DNA of 62,054 nt, filler included, from Platydemus manokwari (Eukaryota): the NCBI GenBank assembly GCA_037951405.1. It is 6 parts of 6 records of this genome, joined end to end, with 100 filler letters (N's around TTAATTAATTAA, not from the genome) between each part and the next. Parts side by side here need not be neighbours in the genome. Positions count along the whole stretch, not along the records: positions 40,122 to 52,277 come from JBBMOY010282226.1; 5 more parts are not named here. One strand, given 5' to 3'. Both the position numbers and the translations under genes were made by a program. The notes below the pieces were generated by a model. It made no database searches. It was not told the origin of the DNA and worked only from the letters and a program-made list of their open reading frames with translations. Positions 43,755 through 46,046 of this stretch are shown piece by piece. Position 1 is the stretch's first letter, and each line of letters starts with the position of its first letter.

Positions 43755-46046
43755 ATGTTTTATAATGACAATGCATATTTTCAGGATTATCTGGCCTACA
43801 CTCAGTGGAGGGAGAACCAAAGGCGATTCACGGACCAATTCTACTCGAGTCAAATGCTCCCATCAGTCGGCAGTTCTTTCCTACTCCCACCCAGGCCAGG
43901 TATCCAAAATGAAGTGAATGATCATCTTGATCAATACAGAAGGAGGAATTATAATTCCTATAAAGGGTCCAATAGAAACAAAAAATCTAATTATCGTTAT
44001 TCTAGATCCAAGCGGCATAATCTGAAGGGTTTCAACACTGGCAGAAATAATACAAGATTACGTAATCAACATAATAATTATAATAATTTCTCTTCTAGAC
44101 CCCATAATCCCAGTGTCAGAAACCAGTCCTCAGAATCACGTATGGGAATCTCTGCTCAGAATCAGAGCACTCAGAATCACGATAATTTTAATTCCTCTAA
44201 CCATAATAATCATTACTCTTACAGACCCCGTCCTCAGTACTCCTCTGCTCCATCGGTTCCCCCAGGTTTCGAAAACCATGATTGGCACAGACAAGATTAT
44301 TATTTTATTAATAACAATGATTCTTTTTATTTTAGACCTGACCGCAACCCTATTGCACAGGAAAAAGGACCCTCTAATGATAGATCAACCGTAGTTGATA
44401 AATCTAATCAATTACATAATAATATAAATAATAATAATATCCATCATTCTAGAACCAGTAATCATACGAATTACAACACCAGACCTACTGCCAATAATAC
44501 CCACCGTGACTCTACACAGATCGGAAATCCGAATAATCAGGCACCGTGGTTATATTCGGATATCGTGCAAACAAATGCTTACCCACAACAAAATGGATTA
44601 CGTAATCACAATAATATAAATAATCCACCCTTTTTTAGACCGAACCAACAATTCCCTATGCCTCCTCCTCCACCTCATATCCCAAATACATCGAACAAGA
44701 CCAATCAGACCCGCCAACAACAATCACGAGACGATTTTATCACCCCCAACAGATGGGCCCAACAATCCCACCAAAATCCCAAAACAAACTTCCGGAGCCA
44801 AAACAGATATGATGCCCTCCGTAATATTGATGATAGGAACAACCAACCCAATCAAACCAATTCAAATATCCATAAGCCTTTTTTTCATTATAATCCTAAT
44901 AAATCTAATCTTAAAAATTCTAGATCTACTCAAACCCATCCCATGCCTCCGAAAAAACCCAAGGACAGTCCCCCTACCGCACGCCAGAGCATCCAGTTTA
45001 GGGGTCGACATGCGAATAACTGTGATCGCGAAAGCGAGCAGTTCAATCCAACGAAAAACCTTTTTTTAAATATTATTTTATTTATTTTATATAATTTAAA
45101 TATTAATTCTCACTTAGATATCATAGGCCTTTTATTATTTAATAAGATTAATATTAATAATTTTAAGAAATTAACTAATAATAATTTTCATAATAATAAG
45201 ACTAATAATGTTTTTCTTAATATTCTACTATCTATATTTAATAAAATCGGTATTAATAATATTAGTAGATTTAACATGTTATTATGTAATAATAACATTT
45301 CTTTAAATAATTTTCACCAAAATAAGCCCATAGATTTAAGTAAAACGACTGACCATATTAACTTAATCGACTTAAATGTAAAAGTTAATAATGATTCTCT
45401 TGACCAATTAATTATCAATCAATTAAATAGTTTTACCCAAACAGTAGATATAGACTTTATTTCAAATAATAAACCATTAATTAATCAAAATATAGTTATT
45501 AAAGATATTTCCCCAATTGACCAATCCACCCAAACTATTGATAGTCCATTGAATATAACTCCTACCCCTTATCAACTAAGGTCTAGCTTAACTTATATAG
45601 ATAGTAAAACCGACCTAAATGACACAGTTAATGCTAATGTTGATCCCGATGATATTAGACTTACCCAAATTGATTCAGATGACTCCATTGAAATAATCTC
45701 CCAATCTACCGTTAAATCTGATAAAATCCCAACTAACTTATATGGTGGAGCCCCAAATAATGACGCACAAATGACCATGCTCGATGATAAGACCGCGACA
45801 TGCACCCGCTGTGACAAATCGTATTGCTTTCCGTTTTCCAACACTAAGAATGTCCCTAAACATTACACGGATAAGCATAATATAGATATTCCAATAGACT
45901 TTACTATATTATGTCACTGCGGTTTTATAGGTAAAGCATTAACATTTAAGATTCATATTGATGAGCATAAATTAGGTAATAATTTTAATCCACCACCTGA
46001 CTTCGAAGACCTTGAATTAATCCCTGAAGATACTGACTCGGAATGA
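43755..46046 (+). CDS. Retrotransposon ORF1: N/Q/R/H-rich low-complexity protein with C-terminal C2H2-type zinc finger(s)
   Basis: 763-aa ORF. CTRCDKSY...PKHYTDKH and CHCG...IHIDEH near the end. Terminates at TGA 46044-46046. Confidence 0.85.
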   Translation: MFYNDNAYFQDYLAYTQWRENQRRFTDQFYSSQMLPSVGSSFLLPPRPGIQNEVNDHLDQYRRRNYNSYKGSNRNKKSNYRYSRSKRHNLKGFNTGRNNTRLRNQHNNYNNFSSRPHNPSVRNQSSESRMGISAQNQSTQNHDNFNSSNHNNHYSYRPRPQYSSAPSVPPGFENHDWHRQDYYFINNNDSFYFRPDRNPIAQEKGPSNDRSTVVDKSNQLHNNINNNNIHHSRTSNHTNYNTRPTANNTHRDSTQIGNPNNQAPWLYSDIVQTNAYPQQNGLRNHNNINNPPFFRPNQQFPMPPPPPHIPNTSNKTNQTRQQQSRDDFITPNRWAQQSHQNPKTNFRSQNRYDALRNIDDRNNQPNQTNSNIHKPFFHYNPNKSNLKNSRSTQTHPMPPKKPKDSPPTARQSIQFRGRHANNCDRESEQFNPTKNLFLNIILFILYNLNINSHLDIIGLLLFNKININNFKKLTNNNFHNNKTNNVFLNILLSIFNKIGINNISRFNMLLCNNNISLNNFHQNKPIDLSKTTDHINLIDLNVKVNNDSLDQLIINQLNSFTQTVDIDFISNNKPLINQNIVIKDISPIDQSTQTIDSPLNITPTPYQLRSSLTYIDSKTDLNDTVNANVDPDDIRLTQIDSDDSIEIISQSTVKSDKIPTNLYGGAPNNDAQMTMLDDKTATCTRCDKSYCFPFSNTKNVPKHYTDKHNIDIPIDFTILCHCGFIGKALTFKIHIDEHKLGNNFNPPPDFEDLELIPEDTDSE

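What the first reader, a model, noticed from the sequence alone, without database searches (positions are those of the whole stretch)
45738..45755. LYGG|A: candidate self-cleavage site for the element's own Ulp1-like protease
Seen: L-Y-G-G-A-P (codons 662-667) sits at the boundary between the low-complexity region and the zinc finger. The diverged copy has CTT TAT GA GGT TCT CCA (57111-57127), i.e. LY(G)GSP with one base lost, at the same distance from the zinc finger, while neighbouring residues differ. Known: clan CE proteases cut after di-glycine (Ulp1/SENP after GG; adenain at (M/L/I)xGG|X). Inference: the readthrough polyprotein cleaves itself here to release a ZnF-protease-RT-RLE enzyme resembling a single-ORF R2/NeSL protein. 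That would give a concrete function for the protease domain of NeSL-clade elements.
Basis: partly seen in the sequence, partly recalled or inferred. Interest (0 to 1): 0.78.

Follow-up and report, generated by a model that had tools for sequence, protein, structure and literature searches.

The report
Conserved Gly-Gly linker in protease-bearing retrotransposon
The LYGG|A motif is real, and relatives mostly keep it in a floppy linker just before the zinc finger, so it is a credible but unproven cut site for the element's own Ulp1-like protease, whose Gly-Gly "lid" tryptophan is itself written as a read-through UGA stop.

Summary
L-Y-G-G-A-P is at 45738-45755, codons 662-667 of ORF1 (43755-46046). 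It is the only Gly-Gly in about 1,880 codons apart from an invariant KLGGLG motif downstream of the RT.

- **Location:** an AlphaFold model puts the motif in a disordered stretch, 6-8 residues before a confidently folded double zinc finger.
- **Conservation:** ten diverged relatives carry an aromatic/Val-Gly-Gly-type motif 17-19 residues before the first finger cysteine. Six have strict GG or GGG. Two have variants that known clan-CE sites allow (FAG|S, LVGS|G). Two have FGS or FGD.
- **What is conserved:** a hydrophobic P3 residue plus GG. The P4 Leu of "LxGG" is not conserved.
- **Protease:** it has His, Asp, Gln and Cys in the order found in Ulp1/SENP, plus the His-Trp floor.
- **Stop codon:** the in-frame stop is TGA followed by C in all 11 family members. 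It falls in the column of the tryptophan that lids the Gly-Gly tunnel in Ulp1/SENP.
- **Second clade:** a distant clade has GG, GGG or GSG in a disordered linker right after its active protease.

Nothing here shows cleavage. SENP-type enzymes work poorly on short peptides, and no ubiquitin-like fold lies upstream of the motif. My verdict is a plausible self-processing site, at about 45%. The element is a new variant of the NeSL-type protease-bearing retrotransposons.

The parts
43755..46043 (+). ORF1, 763 codons. It has a long Asn-rich low-complexity part, then a linker, then a double zinc finger at the C-terminus.
   Evidence: no Pfam family
45684..45698 (+). S-I-E-I-I, a short hydrophobic stretch flanked by Asp and Ser, resembling a SUMO-interaction motif. 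Relatives have a comparable stretch 15-25 residues before their GG.
   Evidence: resemblance judged by eye only, not tested
45738..45755 (+). L662-Y-G-G-A-P667, the candidate processing site. The predicted scissile bond is between G665 (45747-45749) and A666 (45750-45752).
45771..45983 (+). Folded double zinc-finger module. Invariant residues are C683, H708, C720, C722, G723, H734 and H738.
   Evidence: AlphaFold pLDDT about 90; invariant columns; only weak fold matches, including R2 N-terminal fingers
46044..46046 (+). In-frame TGA followed by C. It occupies the alignment column of the Gly-Gly-lid tryptophan of Ulp1/SENP.
46047..46571 (+). Ulp1-like (clan CE, C48) protease core. Key residues are H64-W65 (46236-46241), D81 (46287-46289), Q125 (46419-46421) and C131 (46437-46439).
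   Evidence: Pfam PF02902 at 25.4 bits against a 20.7 cut-off; family profile against SENP1 E 2e-17 and Ulp1 7e-17; invariant columns
47178..47927 (+). Reverse transcriptase domain (YADD at 47709-47720).
   Evidence: Pfam RVT_1 E 3.5e-27
48243..48260 (+). K-L-G-G-L-G, the only other Gly-Gly in the polyprotein. It is invariant in all relatives, so it is read as structural and not as a processing site.
48852..49091 (+). CCHC zinc knuckle (48852-48905) and restriction-like endonuclease motifs RPDLII and IIDLK.
   Evidence: direct reading; weak Pfam zf-RVT hit

Best explanation
The element is a restriction-like-endonuclease non-LTR retrotransposon with a retrovirus-like expression plan. Most ribosomes stop at UGA 46044 and make ORF1 protein. 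A minority read through and make ORF1-ZnF-protease-RT-RLE. Read-through probably inserts Trp, the residue that relatives have at this position. Only that product has a complete Ulp1-like protease, because the UGA sits at the codon of the tryptophan that lids the Gly-Gly tunnel. The protease then cuts, in cis or in trans, after G665 in the exposed linker motif L-Y-G-G|A-P. This separates the low-complexity ORF1 body (aa 1-665) from a ZnF-protease-RT-RLE enzyme.

Shown here: the motif, its conservation, its location in a disordered linker, the intact catalytic residues, and the conserved in-frame UGA-C.

Inferred: read-through itself, Trp insertion, and the cleavage.
For: 1. The motif is the only non-structural GG in about 1,880 codons with 2.5% Gly.
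2. Ten relatives at 32-46% ORF2 identity carry [Y/F/V]-[G/A]-[G/S/D](G) 17-19 residues before the first finger Cys, in sequence that otherwise does not align. They read LYGGA, RFGGA, LVGGGN, DYGGGA, DFGGGP, DYGGGE, LVGSGP, PFAGS, TFGSS and LFGDN.
3. On the tree, GG occurs in three of the four main lineages, so it is likely ancestral.
4. AlphaFold places the motif in a stretch with pLDDT below 50, directly N-terminal to a zinc-finger fold with pLDDT above 90.
5. The protease keeps His, Trp, Asp, Gln and Cys as invariant or nearly invariant columns. Its profile matches SENP1 and Ulp1 at E about 1e-17 and adenain at 4.6e-5.
6. The model of relative P0010 has the CE fold.
7. In SENP1, Trp465 lids and Trp534 floors the Gly-Gly (PMC5030089). 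That geometry favours Gly at P1 and P2.
8. A distant clade has NLFGG|AS, NLIGGG|AS, RKGGG|K and LKGSG|S in a disordered linker right after its active protease. L019 also has DSLGG|K before the protease.
9. The clan-CE protease of ASFV processes polyproteins at GG|X and cuts the short peptide KVGG|NETQ (PMC7178854).
10. The two relatives without GG (L008, L009) have a short zinc-finger ORF of 251 and at most 209 codons. They therefore have little to cut off. This is a weak correlation with n=2.
Against: There is no direct evidence of cleavage or of read-through, and no RNA data could be obtained. L008 (FGSS) and L009 (FGDN) keep the protease motifs in what is visible of them but lack GG at the site, and L009 has no GG anywhere in its ORF1. 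P4 is not conserved, so the adenain rule (M/L/I)xGG is not a family feature. The nearest enzymes by sequence and fold are deSUMOylases, which need the beta-grasp domain and work poorly on short peptides (PMC5030089). The 58 residues upstream of the GG are predicted disordered, not ubiquitin-like. The constant spacing to the zinc finger would also fit a motif that belongs functionally to that domain.
Confidence: 0.45

Rival explanations
1. The protease works on host targets, removing SUMO or another ubiquitin-like modifier from host chromatin or silencing factors or from the element's own proteins. On this view the aromatic-Gly-Gly motif is not cut. It would be a flexible hinge, an N-terminal cap, or a short binding motif belonging to the zinc-finger module.
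For: The best sequence and fold matches are SENP1/2/3/5, Ulp1, NEDP1 and bacterial CE deubiquitinase/deSUMOylase effectors. SENPs need the beta-grasp exosite (PMC5030089). No beta-grasp lies upstream of the GG. A SUMO-interaction-like hydrophobic stretch lies 15-25 residues upstream in several members. GG is replaced in L008 and L009 although their protease motifs are intact. The spacing to the finger is fixed at 17-19 residues.
Against: AlphaFold does not include the motif in the zinc-finger fold. A hinge would not need a hydrophobic residue followed by exactly Gly-Gly in proteins with 2-5% Gly. The distant clade has the same kind of motif at a different boundary, after the protease and with no zinc finger nearby. 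Viral CE proteases do cut linear GG|X (PMC7178854). This rival does not exclude self-processing as well.
Confidence: 0.3
2. The site is cut, but by a host enzyme such as a host SENP/Ulp or a deubiquitinase that recognises a C-terminal-like GG. The element's own protease would not be involved.
For: Host Gly-Gly-specific proteases are found in all eukaryotes. The motif is exposed.
Against: Host SENPs and DUBs need the folded modifier, and none is present upstream (PMC5030089). The motif co-occurs with an element-encoded protease in every member seen. No protease-lacking relative was available to test for absence.
Confidence: 0.05
3. The motif has no function. On this view its recurrence is inherited sequence that has not yet drifted.
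For: Three or four of ten members have changed it.
Against: The flanking residues are not alignable at 32-46% overall identity, while the aromatic-G-G columns are the best-kept columns upstream of the finger. Gly is rare, and the per-position chance of GG is 5e-4 to 3e-3. The changes that do occur are to Ala, Ser or Asp at single positions.
Confidence: 0.05

Closest known systems
[quoted passage not shown]
   Same: Ulp1-like protease upstream of the RT. C-terminal zinc knuckle plus restriction-like endonuclease. N-terminal zinc fingers.
   Different: NeSL-1 and Utopia are described as encoding one protein (PMC4640811). Here a long low-complexity ORF1 and the zinc finger lie upstream of a conserved in-frame UGA that falls inside the protease domain. 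Placement in the clade by RT phylogeny and target specificity were not tested. No cleavage site is described for NeSL in the literature I could search.
Polyprotein-processing clan-CE proteases of DNA viruses: ASFV pS273R (GG|X), adenain ((M/I/L)xGG|X or (M/I/L)xGx|G), poxvirus I7 (AG|X)
   Same: Same protease clan: the adenain profile hit has E 4.6e-5 and monkeypox I7L appears among the fold matches. Candidate sites have Gly-Gly at P2-P1 in exposed linkers. The window's LYGG|A fits adenain type 2, L010's LVGS|G fits type 1, and L001's FAG|S fits the I7 pattern.
   Different: The family conserves a hydrophobic P3, not the P4 of adenain. The closest relatives of the enzyme are cellular SENP/Ulp1, not the viral enzymes. 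Cleavage is not demonstrated. The adenain and I7 consensus sites are from my own knowledge. The ASFV site is from PMC7178854.
Ulp1/SENP SUMO proteases
   Same: Catalytic His-Asp-Cys with Gln, the His-Trp floor, and a lid Trp position three residues before a helix (PMC5030089).
   Different: There is no SUMO-like beta-grasp domain before the GG. The lid Trp is written as UGA in this family.
Gag-pol expression by stop-codon read-through in gammaretroviruses (general knowledge)
   Same: An upstream structural-type ORF and a downstream protease-RT ORF in the same frame, separated by one stop codon. The protease exists only in the read-through product.
   Different: The stop is UGA-C without a conserved downstream RNA structure. 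It lies inside the protease domain at a functionally critical Trp codon. The element is a non-LTR retrotransposon.

Membership tests
Peptidase clan CE, family C48 (Ulp1/SENP) | Significant match to the family profile | tested here: met
   Pfam PF02902 at 25.4 bits against a curated cut-off of 20.7. The family profile A2 matches SENP1 at E 2e-17 and Ulp1 at 7e-17.
Peptidase clan CE, family C48 (Ulp1/SENP) | Catalytic His, Asp and Cys with the oxyanion Gln, in that order | tested here: met
   H64, D81, Q125 and C131 of the post-stop reading. His and Asp are invariant and Gln and Cys nearly invariant in A2; all four are invariant in A4.
Peptidase clan CE, family C48 (Ulp1/SENP) | CE fold | tested here: inconclusive
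   Met for relative P0010 (pLDDT 85; SENP, Ulp1, NEDP1 and SnCE1 matches at E 5e-8 to 1e-5). The window's own domain spans the stop and could not be submitted as one chain.
Peptidase clan CE, family C48 (Ulp1/SENP) | Two tryptophans forming the Gly-Gly tunnel | tested here: inconclusive
   The floor Trp (W65, after the catalytic His) is present. The lid position is the UGA codon. It is Trp in P0007-P0010. The Ulp1 alignment starts two residues after chain position 48. That position 48 is Trp448 is my recollection of the numbering.
Peptidase clan CE, family C48 (Ulp1/SENP) | Substrate is a beta-grasp modifier ending in Gly-Gly | tested here: not met
   The 58 residues before the GG are predicted disordered.
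Viral-type CE polyprotein processing (adenain, pS273R, I7) | GG|X (or AG|X, GX|G) sites in linkers of the protein that carries or accompanies the protease | tested here: inconclusive
   Six of ten members have GG or GGG, two have AG|S or GS|G, and two have GS or GD. The distant clade has GG or GSG after its protease.
Viral-type CE polyprotein processing (adenain, pS273R, I7) | Adenain P4 = Met/Leu/Ile | tested here: not met
   P4 is L, R, L, D, D, D, L, P, T, L across the ten members. The window itself fits.
Viral-type CE polyprotein processing (adenain, pS273R, I7) | Demonstrated protease-dependent cleavage | not testable with these tools
   Needs expression and protein chemistry.
NeSL-clade non-LTR retrotransposon | Non-LTR RT plus C-terminal CCHC and restriction-like endonuclease | tested here: met
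   RVT_1 E 3.5e-27. CCHC at 48852-48905 and the RPDLII and IIDLK motifs.
NeSL-clade non-LTR retrotransposon | Ulp1-like protease N-terminal to the RT | tested here: met
NeSL-clade non-LTR retrotransposon | Single ORF | tested here: not met
   Two in-frame ORFs separated by a TGA that is conserved in 11 family members.
NeSL-clade non-LTR retrotransposon | RT groups with NeSL-1/Utopia/R5 in a phylogeny; insertion into a specific repeated target | not tested
   No reference NeSL, Utopia or R5 sequences were obtainable. There are no Rfam hits in the flanks. The 5' leader recurs about 8.4 kb downstream, and L007 shows copies head to tail.
Programmed stop-codon read-through | In-frame stop conserved among diverged relatives, with protein conservation continuing directly after it | tested here: met
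   TGA in the window and L001-L010, followed by L/Q-S-x-x-x-I-E-A/L-Y/F. TGG is used 21 times and TGA once in the window's ORFs.
Programmed stop-codon read-through | Leaky context or a 3' stimulatory structure | tested here: inconclusive
   C follows the stop in all 14 elements: CTA, CTG, CTT or CAA in this family and CGA or CGG in the distant clade. That UGA-C is leaky is general knowledge. No conserved structure was found.

The most novel reading that the evidence does not exclude
A family of restriction-like-endonuclease retrotransposons couples recoding to proteolysis. The UGA that separates the 'gag-like' ORF1 from the 'pol-like' ORF replaces the codon of the tryptophan that lids the protease's Gly-Gly tunnel. 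Only ribosomes that read through, inserting Trp, make an active Ulp1-like protease. That protease then trims its own polyprotein at a conserved hydrophobic-Gly-Gly linker site. This would give the NeSL-type protease domain a function, which the literature I could search does not describe. It would also be a non-LTR counterpart of retroviral gag-pol processing.
Probability: 0.3. Interest if true: 0.8.

Novelty: new variant of a known kind. Interest (0 to 1): 0.6.

Why it matters
A Ulp1-like protease in NeSL-type retrotransposons has been known since 2000. None of the papers I could search assigns it a substrate or a function.

A conserved, exposed Gly-Gly site turns that open question into a simple bench test: a wild-type, Cys-mutant and GG-mutant comparison on a small fragment. 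A protease whose substrate-clamping Trp is supplied only by stop-codon read-through makes the test more pointed.

If the idea holds, it shows a non-LTR element using a retrovirus-style plan of read-through plus self-processing. It also defines the mature enzyme (ZnF-protease-RT-RLE), which matters to anyone trying to reconstitute site-specific retrotransposition.

Tried and rejected
- **Sequencing runs:** The look-up of sequencing runs found one DNA run with a coded organism and no RNA run.
- **ORF1 C-terminus word search:** nothing found.
- **P0011 N-terminus search:** only the query itself.
- **Viral and prokaryotic genome collections:** no relatives.
- **Metagenome scan:** one useful locus, L010. 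L012 and L015-L017 are other LINE types, and in L014 the upstream region is not coding.
- **Zinc-finger fold search:** no significant match.
- **RNA structure after the stop:** none found.
- **Rfam on the flanks:** no hits.
- **Malik & Eickbush 2000:** not held in the library.

Readings I rejected:
- **UGA as an ordinary Trp codon of the host.** Rejected because the window's ORFs use TGG 21 times and TGA once, and every relative has exactly one TGA in 1,100-1,900 codons.
- **A ubiquitin-like domain ending in GG.** Rejected because the upstream region is disordered in the model.
- **KLGGLG as a second site.** Rejected because it is invariant inside a conserved domain.
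Full report
**1. What is at the coordinates**

The piece 40122-52277 is AT-rich. It holds one intact retrotransposon.
- ORF1 runs 43755-46046 (763 codons) and ends in TGA.
- The same frame continues for 1,117 more codons to TAA at 49398-49400.
- Pfam finds nothing in ORF1.
- In the continuation it finds Peptidase_C48 (aa 47-143, 25.4 bits against a cut-off of 20.7), RVT_1 (aa 378-627, E 3.5e-27) and a weak zf-RVT hit.
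- A CCHC knuckle and the RPDLII and IIDLK endonuclease motifs follow.
- The layout is therefore ORF1 (low complexity), linker, double zinc finger, UGA, Ulp1-like protease, RT, restriction-like endonuclease.

**2. Is the motif more than chance?**

- Glycine is rare in ORF1 (2.2-2.5%). About 0.4 GG dipeptides are expected and one is seen, at the site.
- From 45108 to the end of the polyprotein there are only two GG dipeptides: LYGG, and KLGGLG at 48243-48260.
- KLGGLG is invariant in every relative, so I read it as structural.

**3. Relatives**

A word search with the post-stop protein found eleven protease-plus-RT relatives from metagenome and Logan assemblies.

I fetched their contigs, the contigs of three ORF1-type hits from the exhaustive search and one JGI contig. 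These gave ten family members in which the region before the zinc finger can be read:

| Element | Motif |
|---|---|
| window | LYGGA |
| L007 | RFGGA |
| L003 | LVGGGN |
| L004 | DYGGGA |
| L005 | DFGGGP |
| L006 | DYGGGE |
| L010 | LVGSGP |
| L001 | PFAGS |
| L008 | TFGSS |
| L009 | LFGDN |

- In all ten, the motif ends 17-19 residues before the first finger cysteine.
- The sequence on both sides is otherwise barely alignable.
- The sole GG of the 977-aa ORF1 of L007 is this one.
- On an ORF2 tree, (window, L007) is sister to (L001, L008). L002 branches next, and L003 and (L010, (L005, (L004, L006))) lie outside.
- GG or GGG therefore occurs in three of the four main lineages and is probably ancestral.
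- The departures are single-position changes to Ala, Ser or Asp.
- The conserved feature is a hydrophobic, mostly aromatic residue at P3 followed by Gly-Gly. P4 is L, R, L, D, D, D, L, P, T, L, so "LxGG" as such is not conserved.

**4. The exceptions**

L008 and L009 lack GG at the site, although what is visible of their protease is intact. L009 has no GG anywhere in its ORF1.

In both, the zinc-finger-bearing ORF is short: 251 codons and at most 209 codons. Upstream coding sequence lies in another frame or behind a stop.

This could mean decayed copies. It could also mean a layout in which there is little N-terminal material to remove. With two cases I treat this as a hint only.

L008 also has S-G-G 15 residues further upstream.

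**5. Structural setting**

- An AlphaFold model of ORF1 aa 604-763, built with the nine-sequence alignment, gives pLDDT below 50 up to about aa 668. LYGG is model residues 59-62.
- pLDDT is about 90 from about aa 673 through the two fingers.
- The motif is therefore in an exposed linker, 6-8 residues before the fold. It is not part of the fold, and no ubiquitin-like domain precedes it.
- The finger module has no significant structural match. R2 N-terminal fingers appear only weakly.

**6. The protease and the stop codon**

- The family alignment has His-Trp and Asp invariant and Gln and Cys nearly invariant. All four catalytic residues are invariant among the nine closest sequences.
- Its profile hits SENP1 (2e-17), Ulp1 (7e-17), SENP2/5/8, chlamydial and rickettsial CE enzymes and adenain (4.6e-5).
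- The model of relative P0010 (pLDDT 85) matches SENPs, Ulp1, NEDP1, SnCE1 and even monkeypox I7L.
- The in-frame stop is TGA followed by C in the window and in L001-L010.
- The window's ORFs use TGG 21 times and TGA once, so TGA is not a general Trp codon here.
- Protein conservation resumes at the very next codon (L/Q-S-x-x-x-I-E-A/L-Y/F).
- In that alignment the stop falls in the column where the single-frame relatives P0007-P0010 have an invariant Trp.
- The Ulp1 alignment begins at chain position 50 (N-D-T-I-I-E-F-F), matched to profile position 2. That places the stop at chain position 48. By my recollection of the numbering this is Trp448.
- In SENP1 the equivalent Trp465 "forms a lid over" the Gly-Gly and Trp534 floors it (PMC5030089).
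- In the P0010 model the Trp lies three residues before a helix, as Trp465 does before helix alpha-3.
- So the complete Gly-Gly tunnel exists only in a read-through product that has Trp at the UGA.
- No conserved RNA structure follows the stop.

**7. A second, independent set of sites**

- The distant clade (P0007-P0010, 31-32% identity) also has an in-frame TGA-C between an upstream ORF and the protease ORF: TGA CGA or TGA CGG. There it lies tens of codons (36 to 65 in the three loci read) before a normally encoded Trp.
- Directly after the active protease domain these elements carry NLFGG-AS, NLIGGG-AS, RKGGG-K and LKGSG-S.
- In the P0010 model that stretch has pLDDT below 50.
- L019 also has DSLGG-K between the stop and the protease, and KLAGG-S within ORF1.
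- Apart from these, the only GG dipeptides in those long polyproteins are two conserved RT-region motifs.

**8. Mechanism and weighing**

The best reading is self-processing of a read-through polyprotein after G665. This mirrors clan-CE proteases that process polyproteins at GG|X. ASFV pS273R does so and even cuts a short KVGG|NETQ peptide (PMC7178854).

Four points count against it.
- The nearest enzymes are deSUMOylases that need the beta-grasp domain and handle short peptides poorly (PMC5030089).
- There is no such domain here.
- Two members lack the GG.
- Nothing measures cleavage.

I put self-cleavage at about 0.45. A host-directed isopeptidase with an uncut motif gets about 0.3, and the two are not exclusive.

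**9. Comparison with what is known**

Ulp1-like proteases are described in nematode NeSL families and in Utopia-1_TSP, as single-protein elements (PMC4640811). I found no paper proposing a cleavage site or a read-through layout for them. Malik & Eickbush 2000 could not be read. Membership of the NeSL clade by RT phylogeny and by target site was not tested.

**10. Limits**

- The organism is coded.

Noticed in passing
window 46044-46046; L001:341, L002:169, L003:896, L004:430, L005:2201, L006:1659, L007:6891, L008:2618, L009:729, L010:762: The in-frame stop is always TGA followed by C. It sits in the alignment column of the Gly-Gly-lid tryptophan of Ulp1/SENP. Relatives of the distant clade encode Trp there and place their in-frame TGA-CGR further upstream (L018:719, L019 about 1822, L020 about 2992).
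   Followed up: partly
window 45684-45698 and the equivalent stretches in alignment A1: A short hydrophobic stretch with acidic and Ser flanks lies 15-25 residues before the GG. Examples are S-I-E-I-I here, V-V-I-N-L in L005 and L006, I-V-I-N-L in L004, V-F-D-I in L007, and V-I-Q-I in L008 further upstream. It resembles a SUMO-interaction motif. This is judged by eye only.
   Followed up: no
window 49540-50850: The 3' UTR is a long array of repeats of about 98 nt that have almost no G on the + strand (GC skew down to -0.98).
   Followed up: partly
window 43560-43715 and 51990-52150: About 150 nt upstream of ORF1 recur about 8.4 kb downstream at 70-80% identity. The stretch includes an imperfect GC-rich inverted repeat (GTCGAGGTGAGGG...CCCACCGCCTCG) followed by a T-rich run. 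This is probably the leader of a second, head-to-tail copy. L007 also shows an ORF2 followed about 520 nt later by the next ORF1. There is no Rfam match.
   Followed up: partly
window 52165-52277: The + strand reads as the C-terminal end of a mariner/Tc1-type transposase (P-D-L-A-P-S-N-Y-H-L-F...). It starts where the second copy's leader stops matching the first.
   Followed up: no
P0007, P0008, P0010 (aa about 230-560): In these members of the distant clade, two further protease-like domains follow the active protease and its GG linker. Both have lost the catalytic His-Trp, Asp or Cys, so they look like tandem pseudo-proteases.
   Followed up: no
L007:3960-6893 (P0036) and L008:177-1670: The ORF1 of these relatives carries repeated Cys-rich C-x-C-x2-C units. 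P0036 also shares one short charged motif (around P0036 aa 128-143) with the window's ORF1.
   Followed up: no
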